NCBI RefSeq assembly: GCF_039654945.1
Contig: NW_027361856.1
Coordinates: 4,774,001 to 4,838,000, forward strand
Direction of reading: 5' to 3'
DNA from: Dendrobates tinctorius
Taxonomy: Eukaryota
DNA length: 64,000 nt
How positions within the stretch are numbered: position 1 is the stretch's first letter; the number at the start of each line of letters is the position of its first letter. The notes below the pieces were generated by a model that made no database searches, was not told where the DNA came from, and saw nothing but the letters and a program-made list of their open reading frames with translations. This document shows positions 18,131 to 40,564 of this stretch, in pieces. Both the position numbers and the translations under genes were made by a program.

Positions 18131-19796
18131 ATCCTATTTCTGGCAAATAGAGCATAATAACATCGAGATCTAAACCCTACTTCTCCCCATCATTACAGAA
18201 CATAGGGAATATAAACCTATTACAGCATTTCTAGCGCTAAAGTGCAGCAATTTTGACCCTAGTATTAGAAACTCAGTATAGGGTATTGAAGGCATTAAGA
18301 GAAAATTGGGAACATTTCAGATGCTGTGCAGTAAGATTATTTTAGGAAGTGCATGTTACTCATGGGGCAGGCCAAATCCATATCTTTCCTCTAGGAGAAG
18401 TCGCGCAGAAATGTTGTGAAGACAGCCTCTGCTGGAGGCATTCAGCTTCCTGGCCTTATAGCTGACCACAGAAGAAAGTTAGGTACCCTGCTGAACAACG
18501 CAGATGCATTCCCCAAAGCGCATTAAGGGTGCCAATGTAGATGATGCTCATCCTCTAAGAACCCGATCACACAAGTCAAAGGACAACGTGAACCAGAAAG
18601 GGGAATTTCTTTCTTTGGTTCTTAGCCAGTAGGAAGGTTCATCGTATATAATGGCAATGTGTGTGAGGCACCACTGCATCTCCTTCCTTATGTCATACAA
18701 GACAACTGTGGACTGACAGGAATTCAGCTATATTTACTAGAAGGAAGAGGCTGGGTGTGCATACACCTGATACGGGGGATGACAGCACAGAATCTGCACA
18801 CGAGGTCTTCAGAATGTTTGTCAACATCTACAACCTGTGGTCCTCTTCAATGCCAGGTTTCTTTGAAGGTGGCAAGGATCTCTGTGTACGTTCTACATAT
18901 CTCCAAACTTACATCTTCCAGATCAGAGCGGTGGTAACTGCACAAACAACACTGACAACAGTCCATGCTGGAAGCAAGAGTAAGCTTACAGAAGGACGAC
19001 TTGATTGAGGAGGATTTCCCTTCAGGTCAGTACAGTACATTGTGGAGACACGAGGGTCATTGGGTGTTCTCATCCGCTGGCCTGGCTGCCTTTAGAAAAA
19101 AATTGTGGACCAGGGCTCATTCCACTGAACTCCTGCACTCCTTGACTGTGGGTAGAATACTACTCAGACCTACTGAAAATATATGTCTGGCATAACTATG
19201 ATTAAATGCTGTGTCGTCACAGGTATGTTTATCTGGACTGAGGTGTGGGCCATGGTCCAGGAGAAATTAAGCCAACATCAGCTGCTTGCATGCACTCACA
19301 TGACTCATGGAGAAGAAGACGAAAGTTGATCCTCTCCACCAGCAAAACTTTAGCTATCATAACCTATGACAGAAGAACCTCCAATATCACAAGTCCAACC
19401 TTAAGGATTCTCATGACCAAGAGTTAGGGATGTGGACCTCACATGCACAAGGCTTGTAAAGACACAGCGGACACAAGTGTCTGTCGTATACATGCAAACG
19501 AAGGGTTATACTCTGTATATATATATTATACAGATGTGTTACCATGTGGCTTAGTATTTAGTATTAGTGTCTTGGAAAACATCAGAACTGACTGCTTACA
19601 AAAGTTTGATCTACCACTAAAACGAGGCTAACACCTTCAGCATTTGGCAGACCTAAGGTACAAAGTGTAATGGGTGCTCGGTCACTGGAGGGTTAAACTG
19701 GATAATACAAAATAATGGATATCTCCTGCCCATCAGGTTCCAGCTCTCCTCCCATCTCTATGACATGTGTTACCTCTTCACCCTGCTTAATAGCCT

Positions 19797-20107
19797 CTAG
19801 TACTCACTCAAACTGTGCCACTTGGCAATCAGCTTACGGGGGTTATCGCACACCTCCTGCCAATGTTCAATGCCGTCAGCTGTTACACTGTGCGCCCCTA
19901 GGATTAGCCGGCCCACCACCTGGTTCTTGGTGGTACGATCAAAGTCGATGACAAGGAACTCAATGCTGATGTCCGGCAACAGGTCTATGGGTATGTCATA
20001 GATGAAGGACTCGTTGAAGACTGGGCTGAGCGTGCACTTCTTCACGTGAGTTTTCTTCTTTGCTATCCTTTTTCGACCATAATAGACGTTCACTTTTACA
20101 TAAGGAT
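19797..20107 (-). CDS. SYT11: Synaptotagmin-11, last coding exon (C2B C-terminal part and stop)
   Basis: Acceptor TTCTTCCACAG|AT. Encodes PYVKVNVYYGRKRIAKKKTHVKKCTLSPVFNESFIYDIP...KWHSLSEY*, matching the SYT11 C-terminus and not the SYT4 ending. TAG at 19799-19797. Confidence 0.97.
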
Positions 20108-20144
20108 CTGTGGAAGAAGAACTCACACATTACCCTGGCCATGG

Positions 20145-23100
20145 AAGAAGAGATCTAAAGAGACTGGAGACTGATGAGAGAGGAAAGATCTATAGAGGCC
20201 AGAGACTGATGAGAGAGGAGAGATCTATAGAAGCCAGAGACTGAGGAGAGCTATAGAGGCCAGAGACTGATGAGAGAAGCAATCTGCAGAGGATGGAGAC
20301 TGATGAGAGAGGAGAGCTACAGAGGCCAGAGACTGATGAGAGAGGAGATCTATAGAGGCTGGAGACTGATCAGAGAGGAGAGCTATAGAGGTTGGAGACT
20401 GATGAGAGAGGAGAGATCTATAGAGGCTGGAGACTGAAGAGAGAGGAGATCTATAGAGGCTGGAGACTGATGAGAGAGGAGAGCTGTAGAGGCTGGAGAC
20501 TGAGGAGAGAGGAGATCTATAGAGACCAGATACTGATGAGAGAGAAGAGATTTAGAGAGGCCAGAAACTGATGAGAGAGAAGATTTATAGAGGCTGGAGA
20601 CTGATGAGAGAGGAGATCTATAGAGACTGGAGAATGATGAGACAGGACATCTATAGAGGCTGGAGACTCATGAGAGAGGAGATATATAAAGGCTGGAGAC
20701 TGATGAGAGAGGAACGCTATAGAGACTGGAGACTGATGAGAGAAGAGTTCTATAGAGGACTGAGACTGATAAGAGAGGAGAGCTATAGAGGCTGGAGATT
20801 AATGAGATCTAAAGAATCTGGAGACTGAAGAGAGAGGCGATGTATAGAGTCTGGAGACTGATCAGAGAGGAGAGCGCTATAGAGGCTGGAGACTGATGAG
20901 AGAGGAGAGATCTATAGAGGCTGGAGACTGAAGAGAGAGGAGATCTATAGAGGCTGGAGACTGATGAGAGAGGAGAGCTATAGAGGCTGGAGACTGAGGA
21001 GAGAGGAGATCTATGGAGACTGAAGAGAGAGGAGCGCTATAGAGACTGGAGACTGATGAGAGAGGAGAGCTATAGAGGCCAGAGACTGATGTGAAAGGAG
21101 AAGATGAGAGCTGTAGAGGCCAGAGACTGAGAAAAAGAGAAGAACTATAGCGGCAAGAGACTAAGAGAAAGAAGAGGAGAGCTATAGAGACTCATGAGAA
21201 AGGAGACGAGGAGAGCTACAGTGCTTTGCAAAAGTATTCGGCCCCCTGGAACTTTTCAACCTTTTCCCACATATCATGATTCAAACATAAAGATACCAAA
21301 TGTAAATATTTGGTGAAGAATCAACAACAAGTGGAACACAATTGTGAAGTTGAACGAAATTTATTGGTGATTTTAAATTTTTGTGGAAAATCAAAAACTG
21401 AAAAGTGGAGCGTGCAATATTATTCTCAGAGACTGAGAGAGAGAGAAGAGGAGAGCTATAGAGGCCAGTGATAGAGAGGGAAAATAAGAGTTATAGAGGT
21501 CAGAGACTGAGAGAAAGGAGAGCTATAGAGGCCAGTTACTAATGAGAAAGGAGAAAAGGAGAGCTATAGAGGCCAGAGACTGAGAGAGAGAAGAGAAGAG
21601 CTATAAAGGGCAGAGACTGATGAGAGAGAAGAGAAGAGCTATAAAGGCCAGTGACAGAGAGAGAAGATGAGAGCTACAGAGGCCAGCGACTGATGAGAGA
21701 GAAGAGGAGAGCTATAGAGGGCAGAGACTGATGAGAGAGAGACAATGAGAGCTATAGAGGACAGAGATGAGAGAGTGAAGAGGAGAGCAATAGAGGCCAG
21801 AGACTGAGACAGAGAAGATGAGAGCTATAGAGGTCAGTGACTGACAGAGAAAAGAGGAGAGCTACAGAGGCCAGAGACACAGAGACAGAACATGAGCGCC
21901 ATAGAGGCCAGTTACTGAGAGAGGGAAGAGGAGAGCTATAGGGGCCAGAGACTGAGAGAGCAAAGAGGAGAGCCATAGAGGCCAGAGACTGAGACAGCGA
22001 AGAGGAGAGCTACAGACGCCAGAGACTGAGAGGAGAGCTATAGAGGCCAGAGACTGAGACAGCGAAGAGGAGAGCTACAGAGGCCAGAGACACAGAGACA
22101 GAACATGAGCGCCATAGAGGCCAGTTACTGAGAGAGGGAAGAGGAGAGCTATAGGGGCCAGAGACTGAGAGAGCAAAGAGGAGAGCCATAGAGGCCAGAG
22201 ACTGAGACAGCGAAGAGGAGAGCTACAGAGGCCAGAGACACAGAGACAGAACATGAGCGCCATAGAGGCCAGTTACTGAGAGAGGGAAGAGGAGAGCTAT
22301 AGGGGCCAGAGACTGAGAGAGCAAAGAGGAGAGCCATAGAGGCCAGAGACTGAGACAGCGAAGAGGAGAGCTACAGAGGCCAGAGACACAGAGACAGAAC
22401 ATGAGCGCCATAGAGGCCCGTTACTGAGAGAGGGAAGAGGAGAGCTATAGGGGCCAGAGACTGAGAGAGCAAAGAGGAGAGCCATAGAGGCCAGAGACTG
22501 AGACAGCGAAGAGGAGAGCTATAGAGGCCAGAGACTGAGAGGAGAGCTATAGAGGCCAGAGACTGATGAGAAAGAAGAGGTGAGCTATAAAGGCCAGAGA
22601 CTGAGAGGAGAGCTATAGAGGCCAGAGACTGAGACAGCGAAGAGGAGAGCTATAGAGGCCAGAGACACAGAGACAGAACATGAGCGCCATAGAGGCCAGT
22701 TACTGAGAGAGGGAAGAGGAGGGGCTATAGGGGCCAGAGACTGAGAGAGCAAAGAGGAGAGCCATAGAGGCCAGAGACTGAGACAGCGAAGAGGAGAGCT
22801 ATACAAGCCACAGACTGAGAAGCAAAGAGGAGAGCTATAGAGGCCAGAGACTGATGAGAAAGAAGAGGAGAGCTATAAAGGCCAGAGACTGAGAGGAGAG
22901 CTATAGAGGCCAGAGACTGATGAGAAAGAAGAGAGAGAATATGAGCACCATAGAGGCCAGTTACTGAAAGAGGAAAGCTATAGAGAGAGACCAGTGGAAG
23001 AGAGAGAAGAGTAGAGCTATAGAGGCCAGAGACTGAGAGAGAAGAGGAAAGCTATAGAGGCCAGAGACTGATGAGAAAGAAGAGGAGAGCTACAGAGGTC

Positions 23101-25335
23101 AGAGACTGAAAGACAGAAGATGAGCGCTATAGAGGCCAGATACTGATGAGAAAGGAGAAGAGGAAAGCTATAGAGGCCAGAGACTGAGAGAGAGAAGAGG
23201 AGAGCTATAGAGGCCAGAGACTGAGAGAGAGAAGAGGAGAGCTATAGACGCCAGAGACTGAGAGAAATAAGAACAGAGGCATAGAGGCCAGAGACTGAGA
23301 GAGAAGAGGAAAGCTATAGAGACCAGAGACTGAGAGAAAAGAGGAGAGCTATAGAGAACAGTGACTGAGCGAGAAGAGGAGAGCTATAGAGGCCACAGAC
23401 TGAGAGAGAGAAGAGGAGAGCTATAGAGGCCAGAGACTGAGAGAGAGAAGAGGAGAGCTATAGACGCCAGAGACTGAGAGAAATAAGAACAGAGCCATAG
23501 AGGCCAGAGACTGAGAGAGAAGAGGAGAGCTATAGAGACCAGAGACTGAGAGAGAGAAGAAGAGAGCTATAGAAGCCAGTGACTGAAAGAGAAAAGAGGA
23601 GAGCTATAGAGAACAGTGACTGAGCGAGAAGTGGACAGCTATAGAGGCCAGAGACTGAGAGAGGAGAGCTATAGAGGCCAGAGAATGAGGCCAGACACTG
23701 AGAGAGAGAAGAGAAGAGCTATAGAGACCAGATACTGAGAGAGAAGAGGAGAGCTATAGAGACCAGAGACTGAGAGAGAAGAGGAGAGCTATAGAAGCCA
23801 GTGACTGAAAGAGAAAAGAGGAGAGCTATAGAGAACAGTGACTGAGCGAGAAGTGGACAGCTATAGAGGCCAGAGACTGAGAGAGGAGAGCTATAGAGGC
23901 CAGAGAATGAGGCCAGACACTGAGAGAGAGAAGAGAAGAGCTATAGAGACCAGATACTGAGAGAGAAGAGGAGAGCTATAGACGCCAGAGACTGACAGAA
24001 ATAAGAACAGAGCCATAGAGGCCAGAGACTGAGAGAGAAGAGGAGAGCTATAGAGACCAGAGACTGAAAGAGAAAAGAGGAGAGCTATAGACAACAGTGA
24101 CTGAGCGAGAAGTGGACAGCTATAGAGGCCAGAGACTGAGAGAGGAGAGCTATAGAGGCCAGAGAATGAGGCCAGACACTGAGAGAGAGAAGAGAAGAGC
24201 TATAGAGACCAGATACTGAGAGAGAAGAGGAGAGCTATAGAGACCAGAGACTGAGAGAGGAGAGCTATAGAAGCCAGTGACTGAAAGAGAAAAGAAGAGA
24301 GCTATAGAGAACAGTGACTGAGCGAGAAGTGGACAGCTATAGAGGCCAGAGACTGAGAGAGGAGAGCTATAGAGGCCAGAGAATGAGGCAAGAGACTGAG
24401 AGAAAGAAGAGGAGAGCTATAGAGGCCAGTAACTGAGAGAGAGAAGCTGAGAGCTATAGAAGCCATGACTGAAAGAGAAAAGAGGAGAGCTATAGACCAG
24501 TGACTGAGCGAGGAGAAGAGGAGAGCTATAGAGGCCAGAGAATGAGGCCAGAACCTGAGAGAGGAGAAGAGGAGAGCTATAGAGGCCAGATACTGAGACA
24601 GGGAAGATGAGAGCTATAGAGGCCAGATACTGAGACAGGGAAGATGAGAGCTATAGAGGCCAGTGACTGACAGAGATGAGAGCTACAGAGGCCAAAGACT
24701 GAAGAGAAAGGAGAAGAGGAGAGCTCTAAAGGCCAGAGACTGAGAGAGCAAAGAGGAGAGCTATATAGGCCAGAGAGACAACATGAGCGCTATAGAGGCC
24801 AGTTACTGAGGGAGGGAAGAGGAGAGCTACAGAGGCCAGTGGAAGAGAGAGAAGAGTAGAGCTATACAGGCCAGACAGATAGAGGAGAGCTGTAGAGGCC
24901 AAAGACTGATGAGAAAGAAGAGGAGGACTACAGAGGTCAGAGACTGAAAGAGAGATGAGAGCTACACAGGCCAGAGACTGATGAGAAAGGAAAAGAGAGC
25001 TATAGAGGCCAGAGACTGAGAGGAGAAGAGGAGAGCTATAGATGCCAGAGACTGAGAGAGAAAAGAGGACAGCTATAGGGAGAGCTATAAAGGAGAGCTA
25101 TAGAGGCAAGAGACTGGGCGAGGAGAAGAGTAAAGTTGCAAAGGCCAGAGACTGAAGAGAAAGGAGAAGAGGAGAGCTATACTGTAGAGGCCAGGGACTG
25201 ATGAGAAAGGAGAGCTATAGAGACCAGAGACTGATGAGAGGGAAGATCTACAGAGACTGATGGGAGAGAAAAAGAGATCTATAGAAACCAGAGACTAATG
25301 AGATAGGAGGAGAAGAGGTCAGAGACTGATGGAAG
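20145..25335. repeat. AG-rich minisatellite (variable ~30-37 bp unit, GAGAGCTATAGAGGCCAGAGACTGA core) filling SYT11 intron 3
   Basis: Core repeated across ~5.2 kb. 148-bp higher-order repeats near 21750-22800 (near-identical ORFs offset by 148). Confidence 0.93.
21219..21425. mobile_element. Solitary Tc1/mariner terminal inverted repeat (~207 bp)
   Basis: TA|CAGTGCTTTGCAAAAGTATTCGGCCCCC start, typical of Tc1-like IR/DR ends. Inserted at the TA of a GAGAGCTA unit, AT-rich body, ends at ...GCAATATTATTC. No partner TIR seen. Confidence 0.8.
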
Positions 25336-25406
25336 AGGATAGGACAGAGGACAATATTGCGATGAGGTACGATATACAGAACCCAGGGTAGATAAATAGC
25401 TGCTAC

Positions 25407-25527
25407 CTGAGAGGCCAGTGATGTCCATTCTGGGCAGGTGTTTGGCTTTCAGCACCACGACCGTCATTCTTTGTGCCACCGGCTGATACGACAGCGACAC
25501 CTGCAGTTCACCACGGCTGACACATTT
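25407..25527 (-). CDS. SYT11: Synaptotagmin-11 coding exon 3 (start of C2B)
   Basis: Acceptor CAG|AAATGT. Encodes KCVSRGELQVSLSYQPVAQRMTVVVLKAKHLPRMDITGLS. Donor TCAG|GTAGCA (phase 1, in frame with exon 4), with a possible GC donor 3 nt further on. Confidence 0.95.
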
Positions 25528-25618
25528 CTGTGACAAGAATGCAAAATTAACCCTTCATGTGCAGTCAGCGGGACATGAGATATGCTGAGCTCTCCACATT
25601 ACACCTGTCATCCATTAC

Positions 25619-26409
25619 CTGGATGTTCCTCTTCACGATGTGCCGGGTGATCTGCACGCGCCCTGTACTAGGATCGACTCCTGACAGCGGCACTATCACC
25701 TCACCAATCACGTCATCCCGTGAGAAGCGGTCAAAGCTCAGCACCAGAAAGTGAAGAAGAAGGTCCTGGAGCTGGCTGTAGGGGATGCCATAGAAGGTGA
25801 AAGTCTCATCAAACACGGGATCCAGGGTTCTCCGTAAGACTCGAGTTTTCACCCGATGCTTCTTGTCTGGCAGAATGGTCATTTTGATATAGGGGTCAGA
25901 GCCATGGGCTTGCTCGTCCATCACTGGGAGCCCATGAGCTTCTTGTATGGTCACCACCAAGGCTTTCTTAGGGAAGTTATAGTCCACAGAGATGGTTAGC
26001 GTCCCCAGCGTCACCTCCTCCTCGGGGGTTGATAACGATGATGTCTTGCTAGCACTGGAGCTTGTGCTCACACTTGGACTCACCTCTTGCTCATAGTGTG
26101 GGCTGATAGGCAGCTGGGTAACAGCAGTGGCCAAACCGTTAGGACCTTTCTCAGATACCATCAGACCAGCCTCAGCGCTGCCATCGTCTGCATGTGACTT
26201 ATCTCTGCGTACACGGAAGGTCTTCTTCTTGTTGCTGAGGGTCTCTGGGTAGATGCTGATCCCTTTCAGCATATGGATGAACTTGTATGGGGGGGTCTTA
26301 TACTTATTCTCCATACGGCTGTGGCAACAGCTCCAGATAAAGACTGCCACCAAGACGGACACTACCAAGACCGCAGCGCCAATGAAACCTGCTGCAATCG
26401 GAGACATGT
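25619..26409 (-). CDS. SYT11: Synaptotagmin-11 coding exon 2 (TM helix, linker, C2A)
   Basis: Acceptor TTTTATAG|AC. Contains TM FIGAAVLVVSVLVAVFIWSCC, motif PPYKFIHMLKGISIYPE, and C2A with the SYT4/SYT11 Asp-to-Ser change (VLSFDRFSRDD). Donor CAG|GTAATG, followed by a 91-bp intron. Confidence 0.97.
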
Positions 26410-40530: not shown

Positions 40531-40564
40531 CGAAGCTGGGGACGAGGCTGGTGATCTCCGCCAT
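40531..40564 (-). CDS. SYT11: Synaptotagmin-11 coding exon 1 (MAEITSLVPSF; not in the ORF track)
   Basis: ATGGCGGAGATCACCAGCCTCGTCCCCAGCTTCG|GTAAGT, 34 nt, phase 1. Joins AC of exon 2 to give Asp, and resembles the mammalian start MAEITNIRPSFD. Confidence 0.93.

What the first reader, a model, noticed from the sequence alone, without database searches (positions are those of the whole stretch)
25400..25412. Overlapping GT/GC donors could toggle a Ca2+-ligand position in SYT11 C2B (GLS-D-PY vs GLS-GN-PY)
Seen: exon 3 ends CTC TCA G GTA GCA GCT and exon 4 begins AT CCT TAT. The canonical GT donor (25406) gives GLSDPYVKV. A GC donor 3 nt later (25403) gives GLSGNPYVKV. Knowledge: the SDPY Asp is one of the conserved Ca2+-coordinating aspartates of synaptotagmin C2B, and mammalian SYT11 as I recall reads GLSGNPY, the shifted form. 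Inference: splice-site choice rather than codon change may control this acidic ligand in a synaptotagmin regarded as Ca2+-independent. The mammalian oddity may already be documented, but usage in this species is open.
Basis: partly seen in the sequence, partly recalled or inferred. Interest (0 to 1): 0.7.

Follow-up and report, generated by a model that had tools for sequence, protein, structure and literature searches.

The report
SYT11 exon-3 GT/GC tandem splice donor
The frog synaptotagmin-11 gene has two overlapping splice donors three bases apart; the unusual downstream GC one is the one seen in RNA, replacing a calcium-binding aspartate with Gly-Asn, but the event was catalogued in human, mouse and probably rat in 2006 and is annotated for this species.

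Summary
On the minus strand, SYT11 exon 3 ends CTC TCA G|GTA|GCA GCT. The GT is at 25406-25405 and the GC at 25403-25402. Exon 4 starts at 20107 (AT CCT TAT).

A spliced RNA contig from the same organism joins 25404 to 20107 with no mismatch. It therefore uses the GC donor and reads GLSGNPY.

The two conceptual proteins are letter-identical to RefSeq Dendrobates tinctorius SYT11 X1 (GN form) and X2 (D form).

The donor GTAG[C/A]AGCTATTT is invariant in 11 tetrapod loci except for one base.

The event is not new. Hiller et al. 2006 list human SYT11 exon 3, pattern GTAGCA, "GN vs. D", with 13 against 1 transcripts. They also list the mouse gene and a rat accession, NM_031667, that I take from memory to be rat Syt11. 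Craxton 2010 notes C2B variants.

The idea that donor choice toggles Ca2+ binding remains untested. The D form is probably a minor by-product of U1 docking on the GT, and the fifth Ca2+ ligand position is Q/E in every orthologue.

A side observation: six sauropsid loci carry GA at the +3 site, and four of them are annotated GN, which implies GA-AG introns.

Interest is low to moderate.

The parts
40531..40564 (-). SYT11 exon 1 coding part (MAEITSLVPSF + first base of the Asp codon), followed by a GTAAGT donor
   Evidence: The N-terminus is the same as in RefSeq D. tinctorius SYT11.
25619..26409 (-). SYT11 exon 2: transmembrane segment, linker and C2A domain, including the Asp-to-Ser position in LSFDRF
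   Evidence: Pfam C2 hit, E 5.6e-24. The RNA contig joins 25619 to 25527.
25404..25527 (-). Exon 3 as found in RNA (124 nt, GC-donor form), encoding the start of C2B up to ...MDITGLSG + first base of the Asn codon
   Evidence: In contig record 17, 25404-25527 equals 124 letters with 0 mismatches. The joint 20107->25404 has ends CT..GC on the + strand and 'both' = 0.
25404..25406 (-). The facultative GTA. It is exonic when the GC donor is used (GN form) and intronic when the GT donor is used (D form).
25405..25406 (-). Upstream GT donor (Hiller's 'i' donor). It gives GLSDPY, which is RefSeq isoform X2.
   Evidence: It has the best U1 complementarity (6 Watson-Crick pairs plus wobbles, -7.7 kcal/mol).
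25402..25403 (-). Downstream GC donor (Hiller's 'e' donor). It gives GLSGNPY, which is RefSeq isoform X1, and it is the one seen in RNA.
25394..25406 (-). Extended conserved donor element GTAG[C/A]AGCTATTT. It is invariant in 11 tetrapod loci except at the C/A position, which is window 25402.
   Evidence: (alignment A1)
20108..25403 (-). Intron 3 (5,296 nt in the GC form, 5,299 nt in the GT form), ending in a CAG acceptor at 20108-20110
20146..25339 (.). A 33-37-nt satellite that fills nearly the whole of intron 3, interrupted by an interspersed repeat at about 21213-21425
   Evidence: The depth pile-up at 21108-21507 appears in all four runs.
19797..20107 (-). Exon 4 coding part (AT CCT TAT ... 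KWHSLSEY, stop), the rest of C2B
   Evidence: The RNA contig covers 19733-20107.

Best explanation
This is the exon-3 three-base (Delta3, GYNGYN-class, pattern GTAGCA) tandem 5' splice site of synaptotagmin-11. The frog is almost certainly Dendrobates tinctorius.

The main mRNA is cut at the downstream GC (exon ends at 25404). The split codon G|AT therefore becomes GGT A|AT, and C2B loop 1 reads GLS-GN-PY instead of the ancestral GLS-D-PY. The Asp that corresponds to Syt1 D309, a Ca2+ ligand, is replaced by Gly-Asn without any change in exon sequence. Cutting at the upstream GT (exon ends at 25407) gives the D form, annotated as isoform X2.

I commit to the reading that the D form is a minor by-product rather than a regulated switch.

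Inferred mechanism: U1 snRNP docks on CAG|GUAG, the only good U1 site. After hand-over, U6 pairs with the invariant downstream CUAUUU (+6U, +7A, +8U in the +3 register). This sets cleavage three bases downstream, whatever base stands at +2 (C in amphibians and mammals, A in sauropsids).

Shown here: the sequence, the GC-donor junction in RNA, identity to both RefSeq isoforms, the conservation, and the prior publication.

Inferred: the U1/U6 mechanism, the minor status of the D form in this frog, and the loss of Ca2+ binding in the GN form.
For: RNA and annotation:
- one 675-nt spliced contig (run X3, same organism, 0 mismatches) joins 20107->25404 and 25527->25619.
- the two conceptual products are contained letter for letter in XP_073408395.1 (X1, GN) and XP_073408396.1 (X2, D) of D. 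tinctorius.
- GN occurs in 56 of 120 orthologue clusters. All five full-length GN proteins with RNA-assembly (Logan) support come from salamanders or mammals. X1(GN)/X2(D) pairs are annotated in Dendrobates, Phyllobates, Ranitomeya, Hyla, Pleurodeles, Anolis and Onychomys.

Conservation:
- the donor element is invariant but for one base in 11 loci. The annotated models need GC..AG in Ranitomeya, X. laevis and Cricetulus.

Prior publication:
- Hiller 2006 Table S1 lists NM_152280 (SYT11), exon 3, GTAGCA, donor e annotated, 'GN vs. D', 13 e against 1 i transcripts.
- mouse NM_018804 (Syt11) and rat NM_031667 (taken from memory to be rat Syt11), exon 3, GTAGCA, are listed as confirmed.

Mechanism:
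- U1 duplex energy is -7.7 kcal/mol in the GT register against -1.0 in the +3 register. U6 A41/U40/A39 can pair only in the +3 register.
- in the STAT3 Delta3 donor, U1 binds upstream, the downstream site is preferred, and U6 plus a downstream region set the cut.
- the FGFR GA donor depends on a GT 6 nt upstream and on downstream intronic elements.

Protein context:
- HMMER aligns GLSGNPY to Syt1 C2B GLS-DPY.
Against: Only one contig of depth 6 in one run shows the junction. Contigs drop minor variants, so the GN:D ratio in this frog is unknown. Three other runs gave nothing on the exons.

The U6 pairing scheme comes from textbook and literature knowledge applied by hand, not from an experiment on this site. 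+5 is C, which is poor for U6 C42.

The wide RefSeq annotation of the D isoform (31 or more clusters) could mean that it is more than noise.

Loss of Ca2+ binding in the GN form is inferred from Syt1 ligand knowledge. No SYT11 C2B structure exists in the PDB.
Confidence: 0.8

Rival explanations
1. Regulated Ca2+ toggle. Cells choose between the GT and GC donors to make either a C2B with the loop-1 Asp (Ca2+-responsive) or one without it, giving SYT11 a conditional Ca2+ sensitivity.
For: Both isoforms are annotated in many tetrapods, including this species. The whole tandem donor is under strong constraint, so the GT has been kept next to the GC or GA for over 300 My. The Asp aligns with a known Syt1 Ca2+ ligand. 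A 2025 study of Syt11 lipid binding never mentions splicing, so nobody seems to have tested it.
Against: The GT is needed anyway as the only U1 docking site, which explains its conservation without any function for the D form. Human transcripts run 13 GN to 1 D. All five full-length proteins with RNA-assembly support are GN. The position of Syt1 D371 is Q in frogs and E elsewhere, never D. C2A also carries the inactivating Ser. From general knowledge (Dai et al. 2004, not read here), rat Syt4 C2B has the ligands yet does not bind Ca2+.
Confidence: 0.12
2. An ordinary GT-AG intron. The GT donor is the real one, and the GN forms are alignment or annotation artefacts.
For: The GT register has by far the better U1 match. 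Several annotations give D only (Spea, sharks, many bird projections).
Against: The spliced contig contains 124, not 121, exon-3 letters, with no mismatch and no ambiguity at the joint. cDNA-based zebrafish syt11 reads GLSGNPY. Human ESTs and mRNAs run 13:1 for the GC form. The D-only annotations are what canonical-site gene predictors would produce.
Confidence: 0.02
3. The conserved GTAG[C/A]AGCTATTT is conserved because it is coding sequence of a read-through (intron-retaining) truncated isoform (GLS-GSSY...), not because of splice-site mechanics.
For: Read-through models exist (Engystomops P0012, X. tropicalis P0110...GLSGSSYL/F...).
Against: Conservation stops abruptly 13 nt into the intron. 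The read-through tails differ and soon hit stops. The one variable base changes the codon (Ser AGC to Arg AGA), so protein constraint is not evident.
Confidence: 0.05

Closest known systems
Human, mouse and probably rat SYT11 exon-3 GTAGCA tandem donor (Hiller et al. 2006, Genome Biol 7:R65, Suppl. Tables 1 and 3; the TassDB class of GYNGYN donors)
   Same: It is the orthologous site with the same hexamer GTAGCA, the same intron phase 1 and the same protein event, 'GN vs. D'. In both, the downstream GC donor is the annotated and dominant one.
   Different: The species is a dendrobatid frog. Here the evidence for the D transcript is only a RefSeq model, not a transcript that I could see. The rat accession NM_031667 was assigned to Syt11 from memory, not checked here.
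STAT3 exon-21 Delta3 tandem donor (Kramarek et al. 2024, NAR, PMC11162779)
   Same: The two donors are 3 nt apart. U1 fits only the upstream one, yet the downstream one is preferred. There is a conserved downstream intronic region, and U6 pairing is proposed to set the cut.
   Different: In STAT3 both sites are GT and the event is a Ser indel. Here the downstream site is GC (GA in sauropsids), and no mutagenesis exists for SYT11.
FGFR1-3 GA-AG 'parasitic' donor (Brackenridge et al. 2003, as summarised in Parada et al. 2014, PMC4176328)
   Same: A weak or non-canonical downstream donor depends on a canonical GT a few bases upstream and on conserved downstream intronic sequence. The sauropsid SYT11 models need exactly such a GA donor.
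   Different: The spacing is 6 nt in FGFR and 3 nt here. In the window itself the donor is GC, which is a recognised minor class.
SYT4/SYT11 'evolutionary inactivation' of C2A by Asp-to-Ser (von Poser et al. 1997, from general knowledge; restated in PMC12819558)
   Same: Loss of a Ca2+-ligand Asp in a synaptotagmin of the 4/11 subfamily.
   Different: That change is a codon substitution in C2A. Here the C2B ligand is removed by moving the splice site 3 nt, while the exons still encode Asp if the GT is used.

Membership tests
GYNGYN (Delta3) alternative tandem donor | GYNGYN hexamer directly at the exon-intron boundary | tested here: met
   CAG|GTAGCA at 25406-25401
GYNGYN (Delta3) alternative tandem donor | Transcript evidence for the downstream (e) donor | tested here: met
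   Spliced contig with joint 20107->25404
GYNGYN (Delta3) alternative tandem donor | Transcript evidence for the upstream (i) donor in the same species | tested here: inconclusive
   The only evidence is RefSeq model X2, XP_073408396.1. In human it is confirmed by 1 transcript.
GYNGYN (Delta3) alternative tandem donor | In-frame, subtle protein change | tested here: met
   D versus GN, with both forms in frame to the stop
Typical GC-AG intron | GC at +1/+2, compensated by a near-consensus match to U1 at the other positions | tested here: not met
   GUA|GCAGCU gives only a -1.0 kcal/mol U1 duplex. The GC site seems to depend on the adjacent GT register, so it is not a standard stand-alone GC donor.
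Synaptotagmin-11 orthologue | N-terminal transmembrane segment, tandem C2A and C2B, four coding exons, C2A Asp-to-Ser (LSFDRF), close identity to named SYT11 | tested here: met
   Pfam C2 hit. The C2B part matches Syt1 and Syt4 C2B with E about 1e-50. It is 96% identical to Ranitomeya SYT11 and exactly identical to D. tinctorius SYT11 X1/X2. The LSFDRF motif is seen.
Ca2+-binding C2B of the Syt1 type | Five acidic ligands (Syt1 D303, D309, D363, D365, D371) | tested here: not met
   GN form: D, (G)N, D, D, Q. D form: D, D, D, D, Q. The fifth position is E or Q in all 146 orthologues scanned. Binding itself cannot be tested with these tools.

The most novel reading that the evidence does not exclude
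Donor choice at this site is a regulated switch that has been conserved since early bony vertebrates. The rare GT-spliced isoform restores the loop-1 Asp and gives SYT11 C2B a Ca2+-responsive state in particular cells or conditions. In that case a synaptotagmin held to be Ca2+-independent would have a hidden Ca2+-sensing isoform. A linked point is that the +3 cut is specified by U6 pairing to CUAUUU, so that sauropsids splice a true GA-AG intron here.
Probability: 0.1. Interest if true: 0.7.

Novelty: already known. Interest (0 to 1): 0.3.

Why it matters
SYT11 is a Parkinson's-risk and endocytosis-regulating synaptotagmin that is treated as Ca2+-insensitive. Its C2B loop-1 Asp is removed by a 3-nt splice shift rather than by mutation, and a minor Asp-containing isoform is encoded in every tetrapod examined. 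This is a neat, little-noticed fact and it gives a cheap experiment: compare the two C2B forms.

The site is also a natural test case for how the spliceosome cuts 3 nt away from where U1 binds, and in sauropsids apparently at a GA.

The splice event itself, however, is published and annotated. The frog window adds only another orthologue.

Tried and rejected
1. Reads. Four runs were laid, and only X3 had exon contigs. X1, X10 and X7 gave only an intronic interspersed repeat at 21213-21425, possibly because conserved exonic contigs are filtered as human-like.

2. Loci that could not be fetched. The look-up of encoding contigs had no record for Chelonia X3 or X. tropicalis X2, because only the longest product of a gene is stored. 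The ancestral donor state outside tetrapods is known only from proteins: sharks D, bichir and zebrafish GN.

3. RNA evidence for the sauropsid GA donor. A second homologue search was meant to find RNA-assembly (Logan) proteins from sauropsids, and none surfaced. The GA-AG claim therefore rests on annotation models alone.

4. Literature. Searches for SYT11 with 'tandem donor', 'splice variant' plus C2B, or aspartate plus C2B found no functional study of the two isoforms. Absence from this library is not proof of absence.

5. Rejected ideas. U12-type intron: the donor does not match /RTATCCTT. Coding conservation of a read-through isoform: conservation stops at +13.

6. Steps left out. Structure prediction of the two C2B forms was not run, because the tools return no coordinates from which ligand geometry could be judged. 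The large representative protein search was not needed.

Full report
**What is there.** The window carries a four-exon SYT11 gene on the minus strand.
- Exon 1 coding part: 40564-40531.
- Exon 2: 26409-25619. It has a Pfam C2 hit, E 5.6e-24.
- Exon 3: starts at 25527.
- Exon 4: starts at 20107, with the stop at 19799-19797.

Exon 3 ends ...GGC CTC TCA G and is followed by GTAGCAGCTATTT. The GT is at 25406-25405 and the GC at 25403-25402. Joining 25407 to 20107 gives MDITGLSDPYVKV. Joining 25404 to 20107 gives MDITGLSGNPYVKV.

**Which donor is used.** Two searches for sequencing runs separated two kinds of run. DNA-like runs hold 60-73% of the words of 19708-25700. Runs that hold only about 11-12% are what is expected if only exons are present.

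Laying four runs of the second kind gave one informative record. In run X3 (same organism label as the best DNA holders), a 675-nt contig of depth 6 covers 19733-20107, then 25404-25527, then 25619-25700. It has no mismatch and no gap. The joint 20107->25404 has ends CT..GC on the plus strand, which is GC..AG on the gene strand, and no ambiguous letters.

The contig thus carries 124 exon-3 letters rather than 121, which is the GC-donor (GN) form. It also proves that the run contains spliced RNA.

Contigs drop minor variants, so the absence of a 25407 joint says nothing about a minor D form. The other three runs showed only an intronic interspersed repeat.

**Identity of the gene and the species.** Exon 2 finds SYT11 of Ranitomeya imitator at 96% identity, followed by other frogs. 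The 90% cluster of that protein holds RefSeq models of Dendrobates tinctorius, Phyllobates terribilis and Ranitomeya variabilis, each with isoforms differing by one residue.

The window's two conceptual products are contained letter for letter in D. tinctorius XP_073408395.1 (X1, 419 aa, GN) and XP_073408396.1 (X2, 418 aa, D).

**Distribution of the two forms.** The 120 best SYT11 clusters read as follows at this position:

| Form | Clusters | Notes |
|---|---|---|
| GN | 56 | |
| D | 31 | plus a few with V/I before the Asp |
| AD | 5 | birds |
| GRN | 3 | reptiles |
| read-through into the intron (GSSY...) | a few | |

- Many species carry X1(GN)/X2(D) pairs, among them Anolis, Onychomys, Ascaphus, Hyla and Pleurodeles.
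- All five full-length proteins with RNA-assembly (Logan) support read GN. They come from salamanders and mammals, and four are Logan-only.
- Polypterus syt11a reads GN, and so does the cDNA-based zebrafish syt11 in Craxton's table. Two sharks are annotated D only.

**Genomic donors elsewhere.** I fetched ten non-human loci and located the exon-3 end in each.
- Frogs (window, Ranitomeya, X. laevis S, Spea) and hamster have G|GTA|GCA|GCTATTT.
- Six sauropsids (Anolis, Zootoca, Gekko, Mauremys, Ciconia, Passer) have G|GTA|GAA|GCTATTT.

In the alignment, the last exon bases and the first 13 intron bases are invariant except for that single C/A column. Conservation then stops.

Rebuilding each annotated protein from its own locus shows the following intron ends.

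| Intron ends implied | Species | Protein form |
|---|---|---|
| GC..AG | Ranitomeya, hamster, X. laevis | GN |
| GA..AG | Anolis, Gekko, Mauremys, Passer | GN |
| GC donor at +6 | Zootoca | GRN |
| GT | Spea | D |
| GT plus the upstream CAG of a CAGCAG acceptor | Ciconia | AD |

The sauropsid GA donors rest on annotation only. I could not get RNA evidence for them.

**Prior knowledge.**
- Hiller et al. 2006 defined alternative GYNGYN donors. Their Supplementary Table 1 lists NM_152280, upstream exon 3, pattern GTAGCA, annotated donor e, phase 1, 'GN vs. D', with 13 e and 1 i transcripts.
- NM_152280 is SYT11.
- Their file 3 lists mouse NM_018804, which is synaptotagmin 11, and rat NM_031667, each with exon 3 and GTAGCA. 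That NM_031667 is rat Syt11 is my recollection. No paper held here names it.
- By the paper's own counts, SYT11 is one of only six of 29 GT/GC tandems in which the GC site is the annotated one.
- Craxton 2010 states that Syt11 variants of chicken, mouse and human differ in the C2B domain.

The splice event is therefore known. I found no paper that tests the two proteins. A 2025 study of Syt11 C2B lipid binding calls the domain Ca2+-insensitive and never mentions splicing.

**How it probably works (inferred).** U1 complementarity is good only in the GT register: CAG|GUAG has 6 Watson-Crick pairs plus wobbles and -7.7 kcal/mol. The +3 register gives -1.0 kcal/mol. Yet the cut is made at +3.

In the +3 register the invariant CUAUUU places U, A, U at +6, +7 and +8. 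There they can pair with U6 A41, U40 and A39. In the GT register no such pairing exists.

This parallels the STAT3 Delta3 donor. There U1 binds only the upstream site, the downstream site is preferred, and U6 plus a downstream region define the cut. It also parallels the FGFR GA donor, which depends on a GT a few bases upstream and on downstream intronic elements.

On this model the GT is conserved because it is the U1 landing site. Occasional cleavage at it yields the D isoform as a by-product.

**Protein consequence.** HMMER aligns GLSGNPY with GLS-DPY of Syt1 C2B. From established knowledge of Syt1, that Asp is D309, a loop-1 Ca2+ ligand.

| C2B form | Residues at the five Syt1 ligand positions |
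|---|---|
| GN form | D, N (after an inserted G), D, D, Q |
| D form | D, D, D, D, Q |

The fifth position is E in 108 and Q in 37 of 146 orthologues scanned, and never D. C2A carries the Ser of the SYT4/11 subfamily. No SYT11 structure is in the PDB. The nearest solved domains are Syt1 C2B and Syt4 C2B, 1w15 and 1w16. Whether the D form binds Ca2+ is open, and the odds are modest.

**Verdict.**
- The ligand is indeed set by splice-site position, and both forms are encoded.
- The GC donor is the main one.
- The event is already published and annotated.
- A regulated Ca2+ toggle is unproven, and I consider it unlikely (about 0.1).

The more original by-products of this check are three: the 13-nt invariant donor element, the apparent GA-AG introns in sauropsids, and the U1/U6 register model. 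All three need read-level and minigene tests.

Noticed in passing
L002:9616-9630, L010:26173-26187, L009:24261-24275, L007:8930-8944 (also L003 and L008): All six sauropsid SYT11 loci read G|GTA|GAAGCTATTT. The annotated GN proteins of Anolis, Gekko, Mauremys and Passer can only be rebuilt with an intron that starts GA (GA..AG). Zootoca is annotated with the GC at +6 (GRN). This may be a conserved non-canonical GA donor 3 nt after a GT, like the FGFR case. The evidence is at annotation level only.
   Followed up: partly
L003:9700-9730 (Ciconia); bird and turtle proteins P0046, P0061, P0156: Birds and some turtles have a CAGCAG tandem acceptor at exon 4. It gives a further variant, GLS-AD-PY, when combined with the GT donor, so the same loop residue is also varied from the acceptor side.
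   Followed up: partly
window 20146-25339: Intron 3 (5.3 kb) is almost wholly a 33-37-nt satellite (consensus roughly AGAGGAGAGCTATAGAGGCCAGAGACTGATGAG, about 100+ copies in two blocks). The orthologous intron is 411 nt in Spea and 717 nt in hamster. Only about 70 nt at the donor end and about 40 nt at the acceptor end are non-satellite.
   Followed up: partly
window 21213-21425: An interspersed repeat inside the satellite draws very deep contig piles in all four RNA-like runs, including those of a second organism (up to about 4,800 summed word depth). It is probably a transcribed SINE or transposon fragment.
   Followed up: no
window 20130-20160 and the acceptor-proximal 25-45 nt of L002-L010: A short conserved stretch lies 25-45 nt upstream of the exon-4 acceptor (CTGTGTTATTGG in sauropsids, GGGTAATGTGTGAG in dendrobatids, TTTAATGTGGGAG in Xenopus). 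It is probably the branch-point region.
   Followed up: no
P0012, P0110 (Engystomops, X. tropicalis): These annotated truncated products read through the exon-3 donor (…GLSGSSYL/F…) and would lack most of C2B. Several RNA-assembly proteins likewise read through the exon-2 donor (…KRNIQV…). This suggests frequent intron retention in SYT11 transcripts.
   Followed up: no
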